From Macrostomum lignano (lineage: Eukaryota): a stretch of 64,000 nt of DNA. The DNA lies in NCBI GenBank assembly GCA_002269645.1, contig NIVC01000391.1, forward strand, positions 1-64,000, in the 5' to 3' direction. Shown one piece after another: positions 1 through 36,997 of the stretch. Position numbers and translations under genes: made by a program. A model generated the notes under the pieces. That model did not search any database. It saw only the letters and a program-made list of their open reading frames with translations, and was not told where the DNA came from. The stretch's first letter is position 1. Every line of letters starts with the position of its first letter.

Positions 1-132
1 CAAAACAAAGTAAACAGGCATGCGCAGGCAAATTCTCAGTCATCAGCTACGCTGAAACAATACATGTTGCTAAAATTCATAAATTATATCGTAGATCTTG
101 TAAGAGAAAAGTGATAAATGCAGTTATTTTAC

Positions 133-195
133 CTGTTTCAGCCTGTCCGTGAGGTTTCTCATCTGGATTTCGTAGGACTCCTCTCTGTCAACTGA
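133..195 (-). CDS. TPM: Tropomyosin exon 7, track B (SVDREESYEIQMRNLTDRLKQ)
   Basis: Acceptor TTGCAG|T, donor CAG|GTAAAA; 63 nt (vertebrate exon 7 length), phase 0 to 0. Exons 8-9 are expected beyond the left edge. Confidence 0.88.
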
Positions 196-654
196 CTGCA
201 AGAAACAAACGAACGATGCGGGTTGGAGGAGGCACGTGCTCAAGCGGAGATTTCTCAGCAACCGGACTGGCGCAGACTGGCACTAACAAAATCTGCTTTC
301 GTATTTTTAATAAAAAATTTCACACCAACCTGTCAGCATGCGGGTTGCAAGCAAACTCGGGAAATTTACGCAGGCAAAAGAAGCGACAGGAAAAAACTCG
401 ATGCAAGATGAGCTGACAGCAGAGTGAACAGAAATCGTCTTGATTGAATAGAAAGCAGGAATGAATCAAATTTCAGCAGTAGAAACTCGATAGCCATTGA
501 TATTGTAATATGAAAAGTTCAGTTTCTGTACGACTAATTGGCAGTGACGGATTCAGATCAGCTGATAGGAAATTTTTTTTTGAAAATTCCAAGACCATTG
601 GTTCATCAGGCTTAGCTCTCAGACCATGTTTGCCATTCGGGTCAATAAGTTCTT

Positions 655-1015
655 TCAATAAGGTTTACCCTTCAGGTCCTTTAGATGTATCTATAAGTTC
701 CTTCAGGTATAACCTTCAGGTCTGTATGCTACAGGTCCTTCAGGTTTATCCTTCAGGTCTGTACGCTTCAGGTCCTTTAGGTTTACATTTCAGGTCTGTA
801 CGCTTCAGGTTTACCCTTCAGGTCTGTACGCTACAGGTCCTTCAGGTTTACCCTTCAGGTTTGTACGCTTCAGGTCCTTCAGGTTTACCCTTCAGGTCTG
901 TACGCTTCAGGTCTACCCTTCAGGTCTGTACGCTACGCTTCAGGTCCAAGGTTTGTACACTTTAGGTCCTTTCGGTTAACTCTTTAGATGCTTCAGGTTT
1001 TGTAAGGCCTTTGAG
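655..1015. repeat. Degenerate CTTCAGGT-based tandem repeat in tropomyosin intron
   Basis: Repeated CTTCAGGT(CTGTACG/TTACC) units. Confidence 0.8.
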
Positions 1016-1180
1016 GTAATCTTTCTACTGGACTTTAACTACTTTTATAGAGTAAAATTTCTCTAGTGCAACATTGCCCATAGGAGTTGGAGAGCCAGCA
1101 GCTCCTGGATCCGCCACTGCCACACTAAAAGTACACAATGAACTGCATAAGCCACAGGCCCGACGGCCCGCGCCGCTTAC

Positions 1181-1319
1181 AGCCTTGAGCCGGTCTGTGA
1201 GCTCCCGGATGGTCTCTCTCGTAGGACTCCTCGCGCTGGGCGCCTCCTGCTCGGAGACCTCGAGCGACTTCATGTTGCTTCCGACAACGCGCAGCTCCTC
1301 CTCCAGCTCCAGAATTTTG
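1181..1319 (-). CDS. TPM: Tropomyosin fused exon 6+7, track A ([26 protein letters not shown]...[12 protein letters not shown])
   Basis: Acceptor CTGTAG|C, donor GCT|GTAAGC; 139 nt = 76+63; phase 2 to 0; contains an apparent compensating -1/+1 indel pair around 1213-1241. Confidence 0.9.
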
Positions 1320-1429
1320 CTACAGTTGTCGGTTTGCTGCTTTTAGCGTTGCTGGCTGACGGTTATTATGCATGGATGCGACGGGACTGGGCAGGTGGGT
1401 AAGCGGGACCTCGAGAAGGTCAATGAAGG

Positions 1430-1800
1430 TCAATGGGTTACGTAGATCGTAGGAGTAACTTAGACCACAAGGTTCAAGTGAATCATAAGGGTAGCCCAGG
1501 TTGAAGGGCCACGTAGGTCATAAATTCAAAATCATAGTCATGTGGTCATAAGAAAGTGGGGTCATATGGTCAAAAAATCATGGGCATGGGTTCATAAGGT
1601 CATAAGGTATAGGCTCATAAGGTTACGGGGTCATAATATAATAGGTCATAAGGCTATAGGGTCATAGTTTCATGAGGTCATAAGTGTCATAGGTTCATAG
1701 GATCATAGGGTCATGGTCATAGGTTCATGGGTTTATGGGGTCATAGGTTCATAGGGTCATGAGGTCATAAGGCCCTGGGATCATAAGGTGATAGGGTCAA
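1430..1800. repeat. Degenerate GGTCATA-based repeat (copy 1)
   Basis: Many GGTCATAA/GGTCATAG cores with variable spacing. Confidence 0.75.
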
Positions 1801-2177
1801 ATGATTTCACGCAATGCTAACACGCACATGTGAGCAACAGCAAAAAAAAATTACACCAAAGAGAAGCGAGAACAGCAAAAAAGGGCACAAATCCCAGAAA
1901 ATGCAAAAGTGCCGGGGACAAGCGAAAAAGAAAACGCGCGCATGCTGACAGGTGAGTAAATTTTAGTAAACAAATAAGAACCAATCATACTCATCAATAA
2001 GTTTTGACAGTGCGTCCATAGGGTTGCGTCGATTTTTTTCACCTAAGATTATAATAAATGCTAGAACCCTTCTTAAACTATAAGAGTATACGCTCGTAAT
2101 AGTAGAACTAGATAAGATCAACGCTACTCATAGTAGTAGACCGTCTAGAATGAGAACATATCCATATTTCTGTTCAC

Positions 2178-2324
2178 CTGGGCCTCGCTGGCCTCCAGCG
2201 ATCGGAGGCTGTGGCCAAGGCGCTGCAGCTCCTCCTGCAGCTCCTTGGCGCGCCGCTCGCTAGCCTCGGCGCGGGATTCGGCACGCTCGAGCTCGGACTC
2301 CGTCATGCGCTGCTTACGGCTCAC
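2178..2324 (-). CDS. TPM: Tropomyosin fused exon 5+6, track B (VSRKQRMTESELERAESRAEASERRAKELQEELQRLGHSLRSLEASEAQ)
   Basis: Acceptor CGTCAG|G, donor CAG|GTGAAC; 147 nt = 71+76; phase 0 to 0; aligns to residues 165-213. Confidence 0.88.
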
Positions 2325-2619
2325 CTGACGCCGGAACCGGATGTGGTTCGAGCATTTCGTTACTCAGGGGTCAATGTACTAATTAGAGGAAATTTTTTTG
2401 AAGGCTCAGTTTTGCTACACAGCAGCGCGAGACTCGATGGCTTGCGAACAAGCGGAGTCTGTGCAGCACAATTGTTGGTCAATAACGTAAGTTAAGCAGC
2501 CTTAGCCGCGGTTAGTTCGCAGCTGAGAAGGCTTGCGTTACTCGCAATCAAAGGCAGCCACTGAGTTAATAAGCTGGGTTCTAATTAACCCTGCCGCGAT
2601 AGAGCAGGTAGCTTGAGGT

Positions 2620-3095
2620 CGTGCAGTGATAAGGTCATAGGGTCAAAGGGACTTTAAGATCGTAGGTTCATTAGGGTCACAAGGTCATAGAGTCATTAGG
2701 TCATAATACAATAAAGTGATAAGGTCATGGAATACCGGTAATTGGGTCATAAGGTCACGGGTCATAAGATCATGGAGTCAGCCATAAGGTTATAAGGTCA
2801 CGGGTCATAAGATCATGGAGTCAGTCATAAGGTTATAAGGTCACGGGTCATAAGATCATGGAGTCAGTCATAAGGTTATAAGGTCACTGAGTCAGTAGGT
2901 CATACTCATAAGGACAAGGAGTCATTGGGTTGGGTCATAAGTTCATGGAGTCAAAAGGTCATAAGGACACGGGGGTCATTGGGTCATAAACTCATGGAGC
3001 CATTGGGTTAAAATTTCATGGAATCATTAGGTCATAAGGTCACGGAGTAATTGGGTCACAAGTTCATAGAGTCAATAGGTTATTAGGTCAAAATA
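2620..3095. repeat. Degenerate GGTCATA-based repeat (copy 2)
   Basis: Same core as 1430-1800, with a local triplication of GGTCACGGGTCATAAGATCATGGAGTCAG. Confidence 0.75.
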
Positions 3096-3884
3096 TTCAG
3101 ACAAATGAATGGAATATTCAGTATATGAATATTTTCTACTAATTTTTTTTCTACTAATATTTTCTACTAACATGAAAATTTTATCTCGCGAATGCATTAC
3201 TGAACAAAATTGAGCCTTCAAAACATTTGTATCTAACAACTAGTGGTCATTGACATTACTTTTGTTATCTAAGCCAGACTTCTTAAGTCAACTTTAGAAA
3301 TCTAGCAACCAGAAGTGGCCAAAATTAACTACAAAACCCATTTAAATTGGACTTGCTAGATCAACAATAACTAGTCTCCAGTTGACTTCACCAACTTTAA
3401 GCGCAGAGTGCCAAGAGATACGCACCAAATATACACAGCATTAGCATTCGCGCTGCACACAACTACAACGCAAGCCGCATACCAAAACACAACGGAGAAA
3501 ATGCAGACGCATAAGTTAGTATCAATAGCAGTCGCGCCAGACCAGAAGGCCCCGACTGTGTTGCCAGCAAGGCAGGAGGCGGGAAACTGCGCAGCGCACA
3601 CGCTGACACCCCGCCCGCCCCCTTCACTGGCCCGCATCTTGGACCAGAACCCAAACTTTCACTGGCACGCAGGCTCTGGCTGATGTTAATACATGAGAAA
3701 TTCTAACGAAATTCTATTTCCGTACGTTCAAGTTACTGCTTGATTGGCGACCACGCTATTAGACCGAAAACATCCTTTAAATAAAGCATTTAGCATAGGC
3801 GATTTCAAATCCAACTAGACCTGTCTACTGCGTGTCACAATCGATCTAAAACCTTCGTTATCTAAATTTAGCAATGAAACCTAC

Positions 3885-4565
3885 CCCTCTCAGCCCCTAC
3901 CTCACTCCACACTGAACAGCAACCCTCAATTTTCCTACCCCTCCCCAGCCCTACCTCACTCCGAACTGGACAGCGACCCTCAATTTTCCTACCCCTCCCC
4001 AGCCCCACCTCACTCCGAACTGGACAGCGACCCTCAATTTTCCTACCCCTCCCCAGCCCCACCTCACTCCGAACTGGACAGCGACCCTCAATTTTCCTAC
4101 CCCTCCCCAGCCCCACCTCACTCCGAACTGGACAGCGACCCTCAATTTTCCTACCCCTCCCCAGCCCCACCTCACTCAAAACTGGACAGCGACCCTCAAT
4201 TTTCCTACCCCTCCCCAGCCCCACCTCACTCCGAACTGGACAGCGACCCTCAATTTTCCTACCCCTCCCCAGCCCCACCTCACTCCGAACTGGACAGCGA
4301 CCCTCAATTTTCCTACCCCTCCCCAGCCCCACCTCACTCCGAACTGGACAGCGACCCTCAATTTTCCTACCCCTCCCCAGCCCCACCTCACTCCGAACTG
4401 GACAGCGACCCTCAATTTTCCTACCCCTCCCCAGCCCCACCTCACTCCGAACTGGACAGCGACCCTCAATTTTCCTACCCCTCCCCAGCCCCCACCTCAC
4501 TCCAAACTTAACAACCATATCTTAATTTTCCTACCCCTCCTCAGCCCTCACCTCGCTCCCCATTG
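3885..4565. repeat. 54-bp minisatellite (~12 copies), G-rich on the minus strand
   Basis: Unit CTCACTCCGAACTGGACAGCGACCCTCAATTTTCCTACCCCTCCCCAGCCCCAC; 18-aa periodic ORFs in the track. Confidence 0.95.
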
Positions 4566-4741
4566 AACAGCCACCCCTCAATTGTACAACCCCTACAAGC
4601 CCAACCTCACTGAATCAATAACAGCCAAATTTCTAGCATGCAAACACAGCAAAATCATGCAGGTAATCAATGCCATGAGACAAAGTCGCACAGCCTTCTT
4701 CAATCCAATTCAGTCTCATCGCAATTTCCAGTCTAAAAAAC

Positions 4742-4930
4742 CTTTCGGCAGTCTCCAGCCGAGAGTCGACCCGACCAAGGTCAACCTCGGAGATGGCCAG
4801 CCTGCGGGCGGCCTCGTCGTACTTTCTGTCAGCATCTTCGGCGATGAACTTGGCCTCTTTCAGCTGCTCTTCGAGCGAGCTGAGCCGCTCATCGGTAGCG
4901 AAAGAGGCGGTCTCCAGCAGCTTGCGGGCG
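4742..4930 (-). CDS. TPM: Tropomyosin fused exon 4+5, track A ([63 protein letters not shown])
   Basis: Acceptor GTCCAG|C, donor AG|GTTTTT; 189 nt = 118+71; phase 2 to 2; contains the conserved [10 protein letters not shown] motif. Confidence 0.93.
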
Positions 4931-5157
4931 CTGGACAGTCAGTTTGATTTGAATCAGTCAGTCAGCCAATTTTTTCAGTTCAATGCGACTCGCACAGTCA
5001 TTCAAGCGTCACTTGGACGAAATGAGAAAAAAATCAGCAACGCTTAAGTCAAACGACCCCAAGACAGCGAAAAAAGTAAAATTAGCCTTAAAAGAACGCC
5101 TACTGAAAACCTGGAGTCGGGTGGAAAATTATCGAACAAACAATTGGCGGCCGCTAC

Positions 5158-5275
5158 CTCCTCAAATTTCCGTTCGGCCTCGGCGGCGGCCTGCATTGAG
5201 TCCCGGTACCGCTGCTCGTGCTCGGCCGCTTCTATCTCCACCTTGCTGAGATTGGTCTCCATCACCTTGCGAGAC
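5158..5275 (-). CDS. TPM: Tropomyosin exon 4, track B (SRKVMETNLSKVEIEAAEHEQRYRDSMQAAAEAERKFEE)
   Basis: Acceptor TCAAG|G, donor GAG|GTAGCG; 118 nt (vertebrate exon 4 length), phase 2 to 0; divergent but alignable to residues 125-164. Confidence 0.85.
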
Positions 5276-5390
5276 CTTGACGACAATGATGGTGGCAAAA
5301 TGCTAAAATTTACTCCTGTTGGGCTCAATTTTGCATAGATTGTTCAATAGGGGCTCAAAATGCTTCGGGGAGAAGCATGCGCGCATGCAA

Positions 5391-5534
5391 AAGGCACTAA
5401 AGTGCACAAGGCACTAAAGTGCACAAGGCACTAAAGTGCACAAGGCACTAAAGTGCACAAGGCACTAAAGTGCACAAGGCACTAAAGTGCACAAGGCACT
5501 AAAGTGCACAAGGCACTAAAGTGCACAAGGCACT
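5391..5534. repeat. 17-bp minisatellite (~8 copies)
   Basis: Unit AAGGCACTAAAGTGCAC, perfect copies. Confidence 0.95.
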
Positions 5535-5853
5535 ATATTTTTGTAAACGAAAGCAACTTAGACTCTTATACAAAATCTAAAAAGTTAAATTCATAACGAG
5601 ATGCAATGAAAAACAAGATTTTTTACGAAATAAGAGGTAAACAGGTTCGACTAAAACTGGTAGGACTACTAGGTGTTGTTATTAATTTTACTATAATTAG
5701 AAAATGCTAAACGTTGCATACAAAGTAGTGTTTCCTAAATCTTCTTTTCAATCTTTAACCAGTTTGTCTGCCAACTCTTTGCCAGGCTCCATATGGATGG
5801 ATCAGCACAGGCAGATAAAATTGCAAAGCAAAAACTTGTGCTTACAGTTACTA

Positions 5854-6272
5854 GGGGCGCCAAAGTTGCTGTGGGGCCGTGGGGGGGGGGGGCGCCAAGG
5901 CCAAAGCTGCTGATAGGGAGGGGGCGCCAAAGCTGCTGATAGGGAGGGGCGCCAAAGCTGCTGATAGGGAGGGGGCGCCAAAGCTGCTGATAGGGAGGGG
6001 CGCCAAAGCTGCTGATAGGAAGGGGCGCCAAAGCTGCTGATAGGGAGGGGGCGCCAAAGCTGCTGATAGGGAGGGGGCGCCAAAGCTGCTGTGGGGGGGG
6101 CGCCAAGGCCAAAGCTGCTGATAGGGAGGGGGCGCCAAAGCTGCTGATAGGGAGGGGGCGCCAAAGCTGCTGATAGGGAGGGGCGCCAAAGCTGCTGTGA
6201 GGGGGCGCCAAGGCCAAAGCTGCTGATAGGGAGGGGGCGCCAAAGCTGCTGATAGGGAGGGGCGCCAAAGCT
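5854..6272. repeat. 25-26-bp minisatellite
   Basis: Unit GGCGCCAAAGCTGCTGATAGGGAGG(G). Confidence 0.9.
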
Positions 6273-6350
6273 ACTGCTGTGAGCAACTCTATCTGCCCTA
6301 TCGTGCCAAACTATAGCATTCAGAGCTCAAAGCAATGGCCAAGCTCTCAC

Positions 6351-6484
6351 CGCTCGCTCTCATCAGCCAGTTTGCTGGCCTGCTCAAGCTTCGATGTGAC
6401 CTCCTGCCGCCTGCTCTCGGTCTGCTCCAGGTCCTCCTCTAGCAGTCGGATTCGCCTGGTCAGAGCCTGCACCTCAGCCTCGGC
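6351..6484 (-). CDS. TPM: Tropomyosin exon 3, common ([45 protein letters not shown])
   Basis: Acceptor CCTCAG|G, donor CG|GTGAGA, 134 nt (same length as vertebrate TPM exon 3). Confidence 0.96.
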
Positions 6485-8730
6485 CTGAGGTGGCAAAATT
6501 ACATAGTGAATTAATGGATAAAACTATTGCTTGAATTGAACTTTGAACTTTCGTAAAGCTGCTAAAGCTGGTCAACTCAATGGAAAAAGTTAGGAAAGGC
6601 CAGGACCCAACTCTAACTCATAAATAATTTCTGCAACTTAACAATGCAAAAGTTAGTTTGATTGCCAATACTTTAATCAAGTTGAGTTTTTATCAAGTAG
6701 AATTGATATTAATATATAAATGATCCTAAGATTAGGACTCATATTCAAATATAGTTAATAAAGCCTATCAATTTGATAATTCTTAAAAAATTGCCCTCGC
6801 TATAGAAAAATTTCTATAGCTACTCATTTAAAAATCAAGGGCATTGAAATATATATTAAGACCACTGTACTGTGGCTTCCGATTCCACGCCATATATTGT
6901 CTGTAAAACATAATGGAAATGGAAGCTCTCTTACCCTTATTAAAATTAATTTTTAGTGCCACACCCCCTTACCTTTGGTTTATGATCATTTTCACATCTG
7001 CACTCCATTGAAATGATTGCAAACCAAAGCTGGCAATACCTTTCTGCTTCATGGACTTTCAATTTTGCATATTTTTTCATTAGTCAGTTTTGAACACAAA
7101 TGAGTAGCAGTTTGAGTATTTGACATATTTTTCTTTAGCCAGCTTTGGTTTACAATCATTTAATGAGAAACATACATTTGGGTGATCATAAAGTGAGGTG
7201 ATATATAAGCTATTAGCAAACTGATGTTTGAAAACATTTGATATTTTTAAAATTATTTGATATAAACATTTTTATATAGTGATTATCATTATTTGAAGTA
7301 GTTATAAACCAAAGGATTGCCAACAAAACCAATAAAATACATTAGGGCCTATTTAACAACTTAATAGTCTAGTTCAATAGTAGACCTAGAGGAAAAGGCC
7401 ACTAGGGCCATGCCTCTTTAGTTATAACAAAAAATTTGTTATATTATACCTTTTGATAGATAAAATATATAAGTTTATTTTCTAATATTGGGTTATAAAT
7501 ACTTGGTATAACTTGCCCCCCTCAAAATTTTTCTTAGTCTGTCTTTGGTTGTCATTTTAAAAAAAAGATAATGTGATATAGGCCTAGATTCTTTTTTCTA
7601 AATATATTATTACTATTTATAATTATAAAATAGCACATTTTCAAAATAGCAGGCAATGGCTAGCTTTGCTGAAATAGCTGTTATAAATTGTGGTAGACCA
7701 AAATAATAATGTAACTGGGTGCTGACCAATTCAGGGACAAACAAATTCGGTGACAGAGATTCACCATAGACAAATTTGGCCAAAGCAAATTTGGCAACAA
7801 TCTTGTCAAATTCAGCAATAGAATAATTCTGTATAATTTTATTAATTATTTTGGTACAATGATATCGATCATGCATATTAGCTTTCTTTTTAAATTGAGT
7901 TTGTTTTATCTATTATTTATCCTAAAATTTAATTCAATTATGCTTACCAATAAATGTTTGTTTAGGCCTGATTCTTGAAGAGATACGCAATGCCTTTGAT
8001 ACAATATTTTCTATCAAAGGTCATGCATACAAGAGTTTAGTGGCTAGAGTCTCAAGGCACTTGCCACAGAAATCTAAATTTATATAGTGTATATGTACAA
8101 TAATTATATCAATTGACAATACTTCTATTCTGATATTTTCTGTATTTTTCTAAGTTAACTAACTAACTTCTACTTAGCTAACTTAACTATGTATACCTTA
8201 TAGTCATATGTCCTTAAGTTAAAGTCATATGTTGTACTATTAACAAAGGGGGTGGGGGTTGGTCTGGTCAGACAACAGATAGCTTATATCTGAAGCCTTG
8301 GTTGCAGTCAATAATTCCTTGACTGATTTAAAAATGACTTGTCACCAAATTTGCCTAAATTTTTGCCAACTGCCAAATTTGCTTTTGCCAAATTTGTCTG
8401 TGTTAATTCTGTTGCTGAATTTGTATGCATCCACTTAGGCCTAGCAACATAAGTCACCGACACCATTTGACTTTGTCTTTTGACAAAAATAGGAAACAAA
8501 AACAAACAAATTAAAGATTTTTATAGCTTAATTCTGGATAATTTGGGAACCTGGAGTCACATTTTAAGTCAAAACCAAGCTGCATGGCTGATGTAATTTC
8601 AGAGGTTGCATTTGCAAATGTATGGCTATTGGCTTATTATGGCTTATTAAGGTTTACTTTTATAATTATTTAGTTAGTTATCTTATCTTCATAATTAATA
8701 TTCTGAAGCTTTGACTAAGTAAAAGCATAC

Positions 8731-8883
8731 CTGTGCTCGCAAATGAACTTCTTCCTTCAATGCAGCCTCTTTTTTAGAAAGCTCCTCTGTAACTTTATCG
8801 AGCTCATTTCTCAAACTTGTCATCTTGTTTTTAAGTGTTGCCAAAATGTTCTGGCCTTGACCCTGGTCCTTATTCGAAGACAT
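8731..8883 (-). CDS. TPM: Tropomyosin alternative first exon 1b (short/cytoskeletal-type N-terminus, MSSNKDQGQGQNILATLKNKMTSLRNELDKVTEELSKKEAALKEEVHLRAQ)
   Basis: 51 codons from ATG to phase-0 donor CAG|GTATGC; lies between exon 2 and exon 3 as exon 1b does in other animal tropomyosin genes; LKNKMTSLRNE resembles short-isoform N-termini. Confidence 0.8.
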
Positions 8884-9174
8884 AATCAAATCAGTTAACA
8901 CTGTATTTAAATTTCTAAGTAGGCCTAGTTCTTAGGAAAAAGTTATTTAAATCCAGTGTAAATGAGCTCAAACAAAGGCACTAAGACAAGTGGTAAAGGT
9001 TATTAAATTTACTATTAAGTGTCGTTAGCTAATTCACAAATTCGATTTTTTTCTATGAAACGCATTTTTTATCAAAATTCAAATGCCTCCTTTCGAAATA
9101 AACAAATAGATACATTTATTAGATATTTTTGCAGGATTTCAGCTGCACTAAAATACATAAAATAGGAAACTTAC

Positions 9175-9352
9175 GTTGCTAGCTCGCTTTTCGGTCTCGT
9201 CCAAATTGGTGGTAGCTGCAGCTAATGTATCCTGCGCTTCGTCAACATTAATTTGCAATTGCTTTAATTTATTCTGAAACTCGCCCATCTCTTCTTCCTT
9301 CTTGTTCATTTCAGCTTCCTTTTCCTTTAGCTTTTCTTCCAGCTGGGTAGCT
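9175..9352 (-). CDS. TPM: Tropomyosin exon 2 (residues ~21-80, ATQLEEKLKEKE...LDETEKRASN)
   Basis: Acceptor TTTTAG|A, donor AAC|GTAAGT, 178 nt; heptad coiled-coil; brings the long isoform to exactly 80 aa before AEAEV. Confidence 0.93.
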
Positions 9353-9599
9353 CTAAAATTTTTGAGTTGAATCCATCGGTGAGTGGGGCTTTATCGACAT
9401 CTTAAACAATGCTTGCAAATTTGAATTCGAATTGTGTCGAATTCTGAGCTGGTATTCGTTCAGCATCGCAATCATGCTCAAAATGTATTTGAAAACCCAT
9501 GAAAGCAATCAGTGATGAAAGCAAATTCCTCATTATAATTTAAATACCATTGAAATATCAAACTCAAGTGCAATTTTCTGGTTCATCATGCAAACTTAC

Positions 9600-9661
9600 T
9601 TTTCTCCAGCACTCTCACGCTCGTGCTTCATCACCAGCATCTTCTTCTTGATGGCGTCCAT
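9600..9661 (-). CDS. TPM: Tropomyosin exon 1a (long/muscle-type N-terminus, MDAIKKKMLVMKHERESAGEK)
   Basis: Canonical tropomyosin start MDAIKKKM; 62 nt ending phase 2 at donor AA|GTAAGT, frame-compatible with the exon at 9175-9352. Confidence 0.95.
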
Positions 9662-11269
9662 GCTAAATTTTGGTTGACAACAGCACAGAAAACTTAGCGA
9701 CAGAAAAGGAAACCGACGATAGCAGCGAAAAGCCTAGCGAAGTTGGGTTGCAAGTTGACCGCAGAAAAGATGAAGGCTCTGCAGTAGAATGAAGGAGGAA
9801 TAGGGCCGGCAGCCAGCAGGAAGGAGGAGGGCAATTTTGCAGCGGGCGCAGCGACATTTAACTAGGAGCTGATCCCACGTACCCCGCCCTGACCCTCGCT
9901 GCCGTCCCTGATCCCATCCGCTACCCCATTCGAACGCCACCCGCCCACTCTTTCAAGGATCCACGCAGAATTCTGGGAGACAAAAGCAAGTTTTCATCTG
10001 CAGCAAGCGAATGCCAGAGAGAGGCTGCATGAGGAGGTGGGAAGAACAGAGAGGGAGAGAGGGAAGAGAGGTCGCACTGGGCCGCACTCGGCCCCTTCGA
10101 ATCGATTGCGCATTTTTACTGCAGCTGAAGCAGCCCGATCCACTGGGCTGCAGAAGGCCAAGGTAAAATACGGCTGGAATGATGGCATTTTCCTATCCAC
10201 CTAAGAACGTCGTCCATCCCGATCCCTCCCCAGAAGTGACAAAACTTCTGCAGCATGTATTCGGGCGGCGTACGCAATAATGAACTAATTCTACCTGGTG
10301 TACATCACATGGCAGAGGTTGGTGTGGGAATCGGAAAAAGAAATTCGTCGTGTCGCATCTGCTTGGAACAGACAGACAGGGCTGCGATGCGTCAGAGGCT
10401 GCGCAGACGGGGCAGTCCGGGGGGCAGAGCGCACGAAAGTGGAAGCAAAGTTCGAGCCACGCGTATGCAGAGCCTGAAGCATGCTGTAAGGAATGAATGC
10501 CTGGCATTAAGGGCCAATTCCAACAACGAATCCCGCCCTGCAGCAGACGCTTTCAGAAAGGCCGGCGCAAACCCGGCACTGAATTCTGCTTTGAAATAGA
10601 AAATTTTACAGAAATATTCACGACCACACTGACCTCTTATGGATATTCTGATTGAATTTACACAAGGCTAAAAAATTACACGATAAAGGTAGCTACGAGG
10701 GGTGTATAAAAAGTAAGTTCGATGTACGCTCGTAATTAATCCATGTCTGACACTCAACAAATTTGGAGTCACTGGAACGCGGAAGACCTCATCTCATAAT
10801 TTGACTACAAACTTTTGTGTACATGTGTTACGTTAACAAGAAATGGTGCTTTATTGTTTGGCCTATATGGTGGTTTATAGAGTTACAATTAAAGTTCCTA
10901 AGAGGATCCCTCCAAAGCCGCACCTTTTTGCAAAACGTTGAAAAGAATTATGAAGCAAGAATGCGAGCTGAAACATTGATGGAGCAAAAGTCAATAAATT
11001 CCACTTAAATAACTAAATATTTCCTAAGAGTGCAATTCGTGATTGTTTTTTCTTGTTTGAAACAATCGCTTAATCTAGCTAGCCAAGGAATTCCAGATTT
11101 ACGAGTAGAATTCCTAGGGCTAGAACTTGAAGAACGTTTTCAAAAATAATAAACTACCATAGACAGAACAAATACGAGCTACTTAAACTACATTTATTCA
11201 TTTTTGGTAAGTCAATATCTCAGTTTGAATCTCCGCCAAATTTCATTTCAAGGTATCCACTTTAAGTGA

Positions 11270-14027: not shown

Positions 14028-18983
<4,956 letters not shown>

Positions 18984-21851: not shown

Positions 21852-36997
<15,146 letters not shown>

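What the first reader, a model, noticed from the sequence alone, without database searches (positions are those of the whole stretch)
133..6484. Tropomyosin gene with two interleaved, staggered exon tracks: a 'zippered' all-or-none splicing switch
Seen: after common exon 3 (134 nt) the minus strand carries five cassettes in the order 118, 189, 147, 139 and 63 nt. Established: vertebrate TPM exons 4-7 are 118/71/76/63 nt, so these read as 4,[4+5],[5+6],[6+7],7, i.e. the colinear series 4,4',5,5',6,6',7,7'. Only two paths rebuild residues 125-234 once each: track A = 4742-4930 + 1181-1319 (conserved, close to flatworm muscle tropomyosins as I recall them) and track B = 5158-5275 + 2178-2324 + 133-195 (divergent). 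Three of the four neighbouring cross-track joins (4B to 4+5A, 4+5A to 5+6B, 5+6B to 6+7A) are phase-mismatched and frameshift. Inference: four mutually exclusive exon pairs arose by local duplication, then the introns between successive pairs were lost precisely. That fuses the second copy of exon n to the first copy of exon n+1 and collapses 16 possible combinations to 2, so one acceptor choice after exon 3 commits 110 residues. I do not know whether this architecture has been described.
Basis: partly seen in the sequence, partly recalled or inferred. Interest (0 to 1): 0.85.

Follow-up and report, generated by a model that had tools for sequence, protein, structure and literature searches.

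The report
Flatworm tropomyosin gene with interleaved exon tracks
A Macrostomum flatworm tropomyosin gene carries two complete alternative versions of its middle third as interleaved, staggered exons, because three small introns still present in parasitic flatworms were lost here, so only two full-length proteins can be spliced.

Summary
On the minus strand lie exon 3 (134 nt) and cassettes of 118, 189, 147, 139 and 63 nt, all with AG/GT. Only two splice paths rebuild residues 125-234. Three of the four adjacent cross-track joins lose the reading frame.

The evolutionary inference is strongly supported. Six tropomyosin loci from cestodes, trematodes and a monogenean carry the predicted unfused series 4B,4A,5A,5B,6B,6A,7A,7B, with vertebrate exon lengths. 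The window lacks exactly the introns 4A|5A, 5B|6B and 6A|7A.

The two-track system is not new. Duplicated exons 4-9 and HMW/LMW isoforms sharing one exon are described for neodermatan flatworms, and cDNA-derived track-B proteins exist there. The window also has the internal LMW first exon 1b.

New here:
- the fused, staggered variant in Macrostomum;
- UGCAUG (the Rbfox motif) as the top intronic hexamer around these exons (33 observed, 4 expected), commoner in the introns where the tracks diverge;
- a compensated -1/+1 frameshift just after the former 6A|7A junction.

Use of track B in this species could not be tested, because no transcripts were available. Verdict: a new variant of a known kind, of moderate interest.

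The parts
9600..9661 (-). Exon 1a, coding part (ATG at 9661; 62 nt; MDAIKKKMLVMKHERESAGE-). This is the start of the HMW isoform.
   Evidence: tblastn with human TPM1; sequence and GT donor; joined ORF.
9175..9352 (-). Exon 2 (178 nt). Exons 1a+2 total 240 nt, or 80 codons, as in other tropomyosins. Cestodes have the same 62/178 split.
8731..8883 (-). Exon 1b: alternative first coding exon (153 nt, MSSNKDQGQGQNILATLKNK...HLRAQ) that joins exon 3 in phase 0. This is the start of the LMW isoform.
   Evidence: The position between exon 2 and exon 3 is the same as in cestode loci.
6351..6484 (-). Exon 3 (134 nt), shared by all isoforms. It ends with 2 nt of a split codon.
5158..5275 (-). Exon 4B (118 nt), track B.
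   Evidence: Pfam match for track B
4742..4930 (-). Composite exon 4A+5A (189 = 118+71 nt), track A. The intron 4A|5A present in neodermatans is missing here.
2178..2324 (-). Composite exon 5B+6B (147 = 71+76 nt), track B. The intron 5B|6B is missing.
1181..1319 (-). Composite exon 6A+7A (139 = 76+63 nt), track A. The intron 6A|7A is missing.
1217..1240 (-). Compensated frameshift inside 6A+7A. One base is missing in the second codon after the former 6A|7A junction, and there is one extra A about 24 nt further on. As a result 8 codons read PSARSPTR instead of xQREESYE.
   Evidence: frame comparison; DNA alignment with 7B and four neodermatan 7A exons
133..195 (-). Exon 7B (63 nt), track B. Exons 8 and 9 lie beyond the window.
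5376..5389 (-). UGCAUGCGCGCAUG, i.e. one UGCAUG plus one GCAUG, 105-114 nt upstream of exon 4B. Candidate Rbfox-type element.
   Evidence: Two UGCAUG lie 9-45 nt upstream of 4B in four neodermatan loci.
4637..4661 (-). Two UGCAUG at +81 and +100 downstream of exon 4A+5A. Candidate Rbfox-type elements.
   Evidence: analogous 5A|5B sites in neodermatans; hexamer enrichment
1939..1953 (-). Upstream arm (ACCUGUCAGCAUGCG on the RNA) of a perfect 15-nt inverted repeat, in intron 5B+6B|6A+7A.
   Evidence: the repeat finder I2; duplex -34.9 kcal/mol
328..342 (-). Downstream arm (CGCAUGCUGACAGGU) of the same inverted repeat, 133-147 nt upstream of 7B. Pairing of the two arms would loop out exon 6A+7A.

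Best explanation
This is the 5' three-quarters of a tropomyosin gene of a Macrostomum flatworm, built on the plan known from parasitic flatworms.

The plan has two starts: exons 1a-2 for the long, muscle-type (HMW) protein, and internal exon 1b for the short, cytoskeletal (LMW) protein. Then comes one shared exon 3, followed by two alternative colinear sets of exons for the rest of the coiled coil.

The ancestral order was 4B,4A,5A,5B,6B,6A,7A,7B, with ancestral bilaterian intron positions. In the Macrostomum lineage the three introns that separate neighbouring exons of the same track (4A|5A, 5B|6B, 6A|7A) were lost. That left staggered composite exons 4B | 4A+5A | 5B+6B | 6A+7A | 7B.

Shown in silico: only 3>4A5A>6A7A (track A) and 3>4B>5B6B>7B (track B) give a complete protein. 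Hybrids of complete length are physically impossible, and most mis-joins run into a premature stop.

Inferred:
- Mis-joined mRNAs are removed by NMD.
- Track A goes with the HMW/muscle isoform and track B with the LMW isoform, as in neodermatan cDNAs.
- The choice is set in the remaining 'switch' introns by an Rbfox-type factor binding (U)GCAUG. Sites upstream of B exons and downstream of A exons would favour track A.
- The fusions themselves may simply reflect that same-track introns were the only ones free to be lost.
For: Exons, phases and ORFs.

Tropomyosin identity of both tracks: tblastn; Pfam 201.7 bits for HMW-A, 142.9 for LMW-B and 81.6 for track B alone; heptad register.

Track A is 75% identical to neodermatan A tracks, and track B 39-45% to A tracks.

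Unfused homologous layout with identical order and vertebrate exon lengths in six loci from five species, covering two paralogues.

Over-long gene models that concatenate both exon sets (P0067, P0068, P0070, P0082, P0123, P0079).

Proteins that the sources label as mRNA-derived, with 1b-3-track B: M. corti 'Tropomyosin 1 low molecular weight isoform' (P0033) and S. japonicum 'Clone ZZZ89 mRNA sequence' (P0020).

Literature pointer: independent duplication of many tropomyosin exons, with each copy assigned to one of two promoter-defined isoforms (PMC3342872); HMW isoforms of tpm-1 and tpm-2 are muscle-specific in cestodes (PMC4015340).

Host genus: a PDE2-like gene is 76-88% identical to the M. 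lignano protein A0A1I8JLH5.

UGCAUG:
- top hexamer in exon-proximal intron sequence of five loci, 33 observed against 4.0 expected, antisense 7;
- 4.4/kb in switch introns against 1.7/kb in same-track introns and 0.2/kb in flanking DNA;
- window sites at 4B-114, 45A+81 and 45A+100;
- an rbfox gene exists in planarians (PMC4978528).
Against: No transcript of this species was available. The best database proteins are only 66% (A) and 49% (B) identical. Use of track B, A/B exclusivity and promoter coupling are therefore not shown here.

B exons of Macrostomum are no closer to neodermatan B exons (23-28%) than to A exons. Their orthology rests on position only.

Predicted Schistosoma proteins P0001 and P0002 combine exon 1b with track A, so promoter-track coupling may not be strict.

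The UGCAUG pattern is not universal. There is none in the monogenean fragment. In Paragonimus several copies lie in same-track introns and none close to 4B. Sites between 6B and 6A do not fit a simple 'favours A' map.

In the window itself the enrichment is modest: 3 copies in 1.4 kb of proximal intron.

Track A of this copy carries PSARSPTR, with two prolines, in place of a conserved motif. That is either a sequence error or a sign that this copy's track A is impaired.
Confidence: 0.72

Rival explanations
1. The 'zipper' is a neutral by-product. All-or-none track use was already enforced by regulation before any fusion, as in neodermatans. The three introns disappeared only because they were the only ones whose loss destroys no isoform. 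The fusion adds no new function.
For: In the unfused neodermatan genes the cDNA-derived proteins already use whole tracks (P0033, P0020, P0011). Of the exon gaps in the window, only 1a|2, 4A|5A, 5B|6B and 6A|7A join exons that are always spliced to each other. Three of these four are gone.
Against: This does not contradict the structure, only the adaptive reading. It does not explain why all three were lost while 1a|2 was kept. It also leaves open why the ancestral order alternates (BA AB BA AB) so that same-track exons are neighbours.
Confidence: 0.45
2. This particular gene copy is sub-functionalising. Track A is damaged by the frameshifted segment in 6A+7A, so the copy mainly serves as a track-B/LMW gene while a paralogue supplies the muscle isoform.
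For: PSARSPTR replaces the conserved xQREESYE. The PDE2-like neighbour is only 76-88% identical to the M. lignano protein, which is compatible with a diverged paralogue or another species. From memory of Koziol et al. 2011 (not readable here), planarian tropomyosin genes lost one or the other exon set.
Against: The frame is restored after 8 codons and the rest of track A is intact and 75% identical to neodermatan A. That argues for continued selection or for a sequence error. No other frameshift is seen in about 2.3 kb of coding sequence in the window.
Confidence: 0.15
3. Track B cassettes are decaying duplicate exons that are no longer spliced into mRNA.
For: Track B is divergent (39-45% to A tracks). 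No transcript evidence is available for this species.
Against: 109 codons are open in the correct phases across three exons, with AG/GT at the ancestral positions. The heptad register is kept. Pfam gives 81.6 bits. The homologous B tracks are expressed in cestodes and schistosomes (P0033, P0020).
Confidence: 0.05
4. The interleaving is an assembly artefact that merges two paralogous genes, one of A type and one of B type.
For: Macrostomum genomes are repeat-rich and duplicated. The introns here are full of satellite arrays.
Against: The same colinear interleaved order is found in six independently assembled loci of other flatworms. A chimeric assembly would not place five cassettes in exact colinear order with compatible phases.
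Confidence: 0.02

Closest known systems
Neodermatan flatworm tropomyosin genes tpm-1/tpm-2 (Koziol et al. 2011, Mol Biochem Parasitol 175:181; Alvite & Esteves 2009, Gene 433:40; Irimia et al. 2010, Mol Biol Evol 27:1504). These are cited in PMC3342872 and PMC4015340; the papers themselves are not held here.
   Same: Two promoters (1a-2 and 1b), one shared exon 3, and duplicated exons 4-7 in the same order 4B,4A,5A,5B,6B,6A,7A,7B. A conserved muscle-type copy and a divergent copy sit at the same positions, and the 62/178 split of exons 1a/2 is the same.
   Different: In all six neodermatan loci examined, every sub-exon is separate. In the window, 4A+5A, 5B+6B and 6A+7A are single composite exons, so exon boundaries of the two tracks are staggered. 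Complete-length hybrids, which would be in frame in neodermatans, cannot be made here.
Classical mutually exclusive exon clusters (vertebrate TPM1 exons 2a/2b and 6a/6b; C. elegans lev-11; Drosophila Mhc)
   Same: Tandem-duplicated homologous exons of which exactly one is used. Double inclusion shifts the frame, as for the 118-, 71- and 76-nt exons.
   Different: Classical clusters are pairs of equal length and phase that are chosen cluster by cluster. Here the alternatives differ in length and boundaries (118 vs 189, 147 vs 139 ...), and four clusters are welded into two tracks.
Molluscan tropomyosin genes (Octopus vulgaris and O. bimaculoides, Mytilus isoform sets)
   Same: Alternative copies of exons 4, 5 and 6, and an LMW start.
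   Different: Annotated isoforms swap exons 4, 5 and 6 independently (P0003, P0010, P0012, P0017), so the introns 4|5 and 5|6 exist there and no fused layout is present. The genomic order could not be read, because L005 holds only the 3' end.
Rbfox/(U)GCAUG-regulated muscle and neuronal exons, including mutually exclusive exons in C. elegans (e.g. PMC3585155, PMC4165533)
   Same: UGCAUG clustered within about 150-200 nt of the alternative exons and conserved in position between species.
   Different: Binding and dependence on an Rbfox protein are untested. Some sites do not fit the usual upstream-represses / downstream-activates map.

Membership tests
Tropomyosin (Pfam PF00261) | Colinear match to the family profile above the curated cut-off | tested here: met
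   HMW-A 201.7 bits, LMW-B 142.9 bits, track B alone 81.6 bits (cut-off 38.6). Tracks A and B cover the same profile positions.
Tropomyosin (Pfam PF00261) | Unbroken heptad repeat with hydrophobic a/d positions in the register of residues 125-234 | tested here: met
   a/d hydrophobic fraction 0.77 (A) and 0.71 (B), against 0.12-0.52 in other registers; human TPM1 0.87. Exception: the 8 frameshifted codons in 6A+7A contain two prolines.
Flatworm two-track tpm gene (HMW/LMW, duplicated exons 4-9) | Exons 1a-2 plus an internal alternative first exon 1b, both joining a single shared exon 3 | tested here: met
   Exons at 9661..9600, 9352..9175, 8883..8731 and 6484..6351 with compatible phases. The order is the same as in L001 and L002.
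Flatworm two-track tpm gene (HMW/LMW, duplicated exons 4-9) | Two copies each of exons 4, 5, 6 and 7 in the order B A A B B A A B | tested here: met
   Window: 4B,[4A5A],[5B6B],[6A7A],7B. Full series in L001-L004 and L007; partial series (to 5B) in L006.
Flatworm two-track tpm gene (HMW/LMW, duplicated exons 4-9) | Each sub-exon separate, with lengths 118/71/76/63 | tested here: not met
   Introns 4A|5A, 5B|6B and 6A|7A are absent in the window (189, 147 and 139 nt exons). This is the variant feature.
Flatworm two-track tpm gene (HMW/LMW, duplicated exons 4-9) | Duplicated exons 8 and 9 | not testable with these tools
   The window ends 132 nt after exon 7B, and no exon 8/9 match was found in the window.
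Flatworm two-track tpm gene (HMW/LMW, duplicated exons 4-9) | mRNAs use one whole track; HMW goes with A and LMW with B | not testable with these tools
   No proteins or transcripts of this species are in the databases. Relatives: P0033 and P0020 (1b+B), P0011 (1a-2+A).
Classical mutually exclusive exon pair | Adjacent alternatives of the same length and phase | tested here: not met
   Adjacent cassettes are 118/189/147/139/63 nt with different phases. The criterion is met only by the underlying sub-exons.
Frame-enforced (NMD-backed) exclusivity | Joint inclusion or cross-joining produces a premature stop | tested here: met
   PTC at codon 98 (4B>45A) and codon 109 (45A>56B); 56B>67A is out of frame with a stop in 7B. 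67A>7B is the exception, staying in frame. Degradation by NMD was not tested.
Rbfox-regulated exons | (U)GCAUG enriched and positionally conserved near the regulated exons | tested here: met
   33 observed against 4.0 expected, the top hexamer. 4.4/kb (switch introns) against 0.2/kb background. Paired sites upstream of 4B in 4 loci. Weaker in the window, absent in L006, differently placed in L007.
Rbfox-regulated exons | Splicing choice depends on an Rbfox protein binding these sites | not testable with these tools
   Only the presence of Smed-rbfox-1 in a planarian is documented (PMC4978528).
Docking-site/selector RNA pairing (Dscam, 14-3-3zeta type) | One docking sequence complementary to a selector next to each alternative exon | tested here: not met
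   The inverted-repeat search of 1-6600 finds a single strong pair (15 nt, flanking 6A+7A) and no docking/selector series.

The most novel reading that the evidence does not exclude
Intron loss has hard-wired a coordinated multi-cluster splicing programme. Four regulated mutually exclusive choices are reduced to two interleaved composite-exon tracks. Only the introns that carry the Rbfox-type switch elements are kept. An RNA stem containing GCAUG (1939-1953 / 328-342) competes with factor binding to loop out the track-A exon. Under this reading the fusion was selected because it makes hybrids impossible, and it shows a general route by which coordinated alternative exons become physically coupled.
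Probability: 0.25. Interest if true: 0.75.

Novelty: new variant of a known kind. Interest (0 to 1): 0.55.

Why it matters
How cells coordinate several distant alternative-splicing choices within one gene is an open question. Flatworm tropomyosin is an extreme case, with six duplicated exons and two isoforms that share one exon.

The Macrostomum locus gives a natural 'after' state next to the neodermatan 'before' state. The introns inside a track could be deleted. The introns between tracks were kept, and in most neodermatan loci these carry most of the UGCAUG motifs. This separates dispensable from regulatory introns.

It also dates the two-track arrangement to before the split of Macrostomorpha and Neodermata, if the B exons are orthologous.

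It offers a tractable test system: Macrostomum allows RNAi, so rbfox or NMD-factor knock-down with track-specific RT-PCR is feasible.

If the fused layout is only a neutral by-product, the finding is still a clean documented example of constrained intron loss inside a mutually exclusive exon array.

Tried and rejected
- Direct transcript evidence. Two protein searches with track B and with HMW-A found nothing above 49% and 66% identity. This species' tropomyosin is not in the collection, so splice junctions could not be verified.
- Look-ups of LMW isoforms P0001, P0002 and P0010 failed, because only the longest product per gene is on record. I used over-long gene models instead.
- The key papers (Irimia 2010, Koziol 2011) are not held. 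What I state about them comes from citing papers and from memory.
- Orthology of B exons by sequence is inconclusive. B tracks are 23-33% identical to each other in every comparison between genes or lineages; only the two cestode tpm-1 orthologues (Hymenolepis and Echinococcus) reach 72%.
- Mollusc genomic order: the Octopus locus returned only exons 8-9.
- A docking/selector model was rejected, since only one inverted repeat was found. Perfect 15-nt inverted repeats outside satellites are rare but not unique: a second lies at 7782/8371.
- Steric hindrance between 4B and 4A+5A is unlikely. The gap is 227 nt, and CUGAC branch-point-like motifs lie about 35-45 nt from the acceptor (read).
- An early claim that same-track introns lack UGCAUG (2 against 32) had to be softened after adding Paragonimus and the monogenean (7 against 34 in proximal sequence, p=0.011).
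- Rfam found nothing in the window.
- No further tropomyosin exon copies were found in the window.

Full report
**Observation.**

On the minus strand of window 1-9700 lies most of a tropomyosin gene.
- exon 3 at 6484..6351 (134 nt)
- 118-nt cassette at 5275..5158
- 189-nt cassette at 4930..4742
- 147-nt cassette at 2324..2178
- 139-nt cassette at 1319..1181
- 63-nt cassette at 195..133

Each is flanked by AG and GT. Exon 3 + 189 + 139 and exon 3 + 118 + 147 + 63 both give open 462-nt frames.

I enumerated all 32 subsets of the five cassettes:
- Only those two paths encode the full 110 residues.
- 4B>4A5A stops at codon 98.
- 4A5A>5B6B stops at codon 109.
- 5B6B>6A7A leaves the frame and stops in 7B.
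- 6A7A>7B is in frame (+21 aa).
- Six shortened or lengthened in-frame paths remain. All differ by multiples of seven residues.

Both tracks are real tropomyosin sequence. tblastn E-values against human TPM1 go down to 4e-13. Track B alone scores 81.6 bits on Pfam Tropomyosin over the same profile positions as track A. It keeps the heptad register, with 0.71 hydrophobic a/d positions against 0.77 for A and 0.87 for human.

Upstream are exon 1a (9661..9600), exon 2 (9352..9175) and an internal alternative first coding exon 1b (8883..8731, MSSNKDQGQ...HLRAQ). Exon 1b joins exon 3 in phase. The gene therefore has the HMW/LMW two-promoter plan.

Inside 6A+7A the conserved motif QREESYE is encoded in the +1 frame, and the exon's own frame reads PSARSPTR. 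One base is missing in the second codon after the former 6A|7A junction, and one A is added about 24 nt later. Length and downstream frame are preserved.

No other frameshift is seen in about 2.3 kb of coding sequence in the window. Both changes sit in slippage-prone contexts (CCC and GAGAGAG). I cannot decide between a real compensated frameshift and a local assembly error.

**Source.**

A PDE2-like gene at 21855-24633 (minus strand) is 76-88% identical to Macrostomum lignano protein A0A1I8JLH5, and much less similar to anything else. The window therefore comes from a Macrostomum, either another species or a diverged paralogue. No tropomyosin of this organism is in the protein collection. The best hits are 66% identical for track A and 49% for track B.

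**Comparison with relatives.**

Several neodermatan gene models are too long (371-394 aa) because they string both exon sets together. I fetched six loci:
- Hymenolepis diminuta tpm-1 (L001) and tpm-2 (L004)
- Echinococcus granulosus tpm-1 (L002)
- Schistosoma margrebowiei (L003)
- Protopolystoma xenopodis (L006)
- Paragonimus westermani (L007)

I then mapped exons by length, splice sites, frame and similarity. All show 3(134) | 4B(118) | 4A(118) | 5A(71) | 5B(71) | 6B(76) | 6A(76) | 7A(63) | 7B(63) | 8A(70) | 8B(70). In the two cestode tpm-1 loci (L001, L002) 9B and 9A follow. L006 reaches only to 5B.

The window has the same order and the same placement of conserved and divergent copies. It lacks the introns 4A|5A, 5B|6B and 6A|7A.

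It makes intron loss in the Macrostomum lineage far more likely than three intron gains at ancestral positions in Neodermata.

Track A is 75% identical to neodermatan A tracks. Track B is 39-45% identical to A tracks and only 23-28% to neodermatan B tracks. The B tracks are also only 28-33% identical between genes and between cestodes and Schistosoma (72% between the two cestode tpm-1 orthologues). Orthology of the B exons therefore rests on position, not on sequence.

Octopus isoforms swap exons 4, 5 and 6 independently. The fused layout is thus not a general spiralian structure.

**What is already known.**

A review (PMC3342872) states that many tropomyosin exons were duplicated independently across bilaterians, and that each copy became assigned to one of two promoter-defined isoforms. 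It cites Irimia et al. 2010 and Koziol et al. 2011.

PMC4015340 describes muscle-specific HMW isoforms of cestode tpm-1 and tpm-2. It also cites Alvite & Esteves 2009 on gene structure.

From memory of Koziol et al. 2011 (not readable here): most exons are duplicated and spliced mutually exclusively, so the two isoforms of a gene share one exon.

In the database, the M. corti 'Tropomyosin 1 low molecular weight isoform' (P0033) and the S. japonicum protein named 'Clone ZZZ89 mRNA sequence' (P0020) are 1b-3-track B. HMW proteins are 1a-2-3-track A.

The two-track principle is therefore known. The fused, staggered version is, as far as I could find, not described.

**Mechanism.**

*Shown:* the geometry allows only two complete products and puts most mis-joins out of frame.

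*Inferred:* NMD removes the mis-joined products.

For the choice itself I looked for cis elements without prior assumption. I counted hexamers in intron sequence within 150 nt of the exons between exon 3 and 8B, across the window and four loci.
- TGCATG is by far the most over-represented hexamer: 33 observed against 4.0 expected.
- It is present in all five sequences; the antisense hexamer occurs 7 times.
- The next-ranked hexamers overlap the same core.

UGCAUG is the binding motif of Rbfox splicing factors (established knowledge), and a planarian rbfox gene exists.

Where the motif lies:
- In Hymenolepis (both genes), Echinococcus and Schistosoma, two copies sit 9-45 nt upstream of 4B.
- Others lie in 5A|5B, 6B|6A, 7A|7B, 7B|8A and 8A|8B.
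- Over all six neodermatan loci, within 200 nt of exons, the density is 4.4/kb in introns where the tracks diverge, 1.7/kb in same-track introns (p=0.011) and 0.2/kb in flanking DNA.
- The window has UGCAUGCGCGCAUG 105-114 nt upstream of 4B and two UGCAUG at +81 and +100 after 4A+5A. GCAUG occurs at 56B+233, 7B-146 and 7B+110.

By the usual position rule, sites upstream of B exons and downstream of A exons would favour track A where the factor is present, for example in muscle.

Limits of this reading:
- The monogenean fragment has no copy.
- Paragonimus has several copies in same-track introns.
- The 6B|6A sites do not fit the simple rule.

A perfect 15-nt inverted repeat (1939-1953 / 328-342) has extended pairing of -34.9 kcal/mol, and both arms contain GCAUGC. 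It flanks 6A+7A and could loop it out, bringing the 5B6B donor close to the 7B acceptor. This is a lead only.

**Adaptive or neutral?**

Only introns whose two flanking exons are always spliced together can be lost without destroying an isoform. In the window these are 1a|2, 4A|5A, 5B|6B and 6A|7A, and three of the four are gone. The pattern is therefore what constrained neutral loss would produce, and I rate that reading about as likely as selection for coupling.

The alternating ancestral order, which makes same-track exons neighbours and halves the number of regulated skips, remains unexplained.

**Verdict.**

The functional 'switch' is plausible and has a candidate regulator, but it is untested in this species. 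This is a new variant of a known flatworm tropomyosin architecture, and of moderate interest.

Noticed in passing
window 1217-1243 (minus strand), inside exon 6A+7A: A -1/+1 compensated frameshift begins 4-5 nt after the former 6A|7A junction. Eight codons read PSARSPTR instead of the conserved xQREESYE. It could be an imprecise intron deletion later compensated, a real slippage pair, or a local assembly error.
   Followed up: partly
window 328-342 and 1939-1953: A perfect 15-nt inverted repeat flanks exon 6A+7A on the pre-mRNA, and each arm contains GCAUGC. The extended duplex is -34.9 kcal/mol. A second perfect 15-nt inverted repeat lies at 7782/8371 in the intron between exon 1b and exon 3.
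   Followed up: partly
L001-L004, L007 (neodermatan tropomyosin loci): The duplicated exons alternate in order (4B 4A | 5A 5B | 6B 6A | 7A 7B | 8A 8B, then 9B 9A in the two cestode tpm-1 loci), so same-track exons are neighbours. This holds in both paralogues and in cestodes and trematodes. Why the order alternates is unexplained.
   Followed up: partly
window 8731-9661 versus 1181-6484: There is a sharp composition shift within one gene. Exons 1a, 2 and 1b are 41-50% GC, while exons 3 to 6A+7A are 61-71% GC. The surrounding 6-10 kb region is 37% GC, against 45-51% for 1-6 kb.
   Followed up: no
window 686-936, 1559-1799, 2745-3080, 3880-4611, 5386-5535, 5900-6276: Every large intron of the tropomyosin gene is filled with tandem satellite arrays, for example a 54-nt unit x13.5, a 26-nt unit x14.5 and a 17-nt unit x8.8. 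These account for most of the difference in intron size from cestodes.
   Followed up: no
window 21855-24633 (minus strand): A PDE2-like cyclic-nucleotide phosphodiesterase gene (catalytic domain) is 76-88% identical to M. lignano A0A1I8JLH5. One intron begins with a long (ATCT)n-type array that reads through as 'SIYL' repeats.
   Followed up: partly
window 17191-17820 (plus strand): A 209-aa ORF has a signal-peptide-like start followed by Gly/Tyr/His/Glu-rich repeats ([11 protein letters not shown] x8). It has no Pfam match. It could be a secreted structural or adhesive protein, or only a translated repeat.
   Followed up: partly
window 12.0-16.3 kb, 19.2-20.3 kb, 40-43 kb, 46-47 kb, 50-50.5 kb, 52.7-53.9 kb, 56.8-57.4 kb: There are very long simple and satellite repeat arrays, of (GTCT)n, (ATCT)n and GA-rich types and 20-60-nt units, some in inverted orientation to each other. 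The Rfam scan of the whole window found no RNA family.
   Followed up: no
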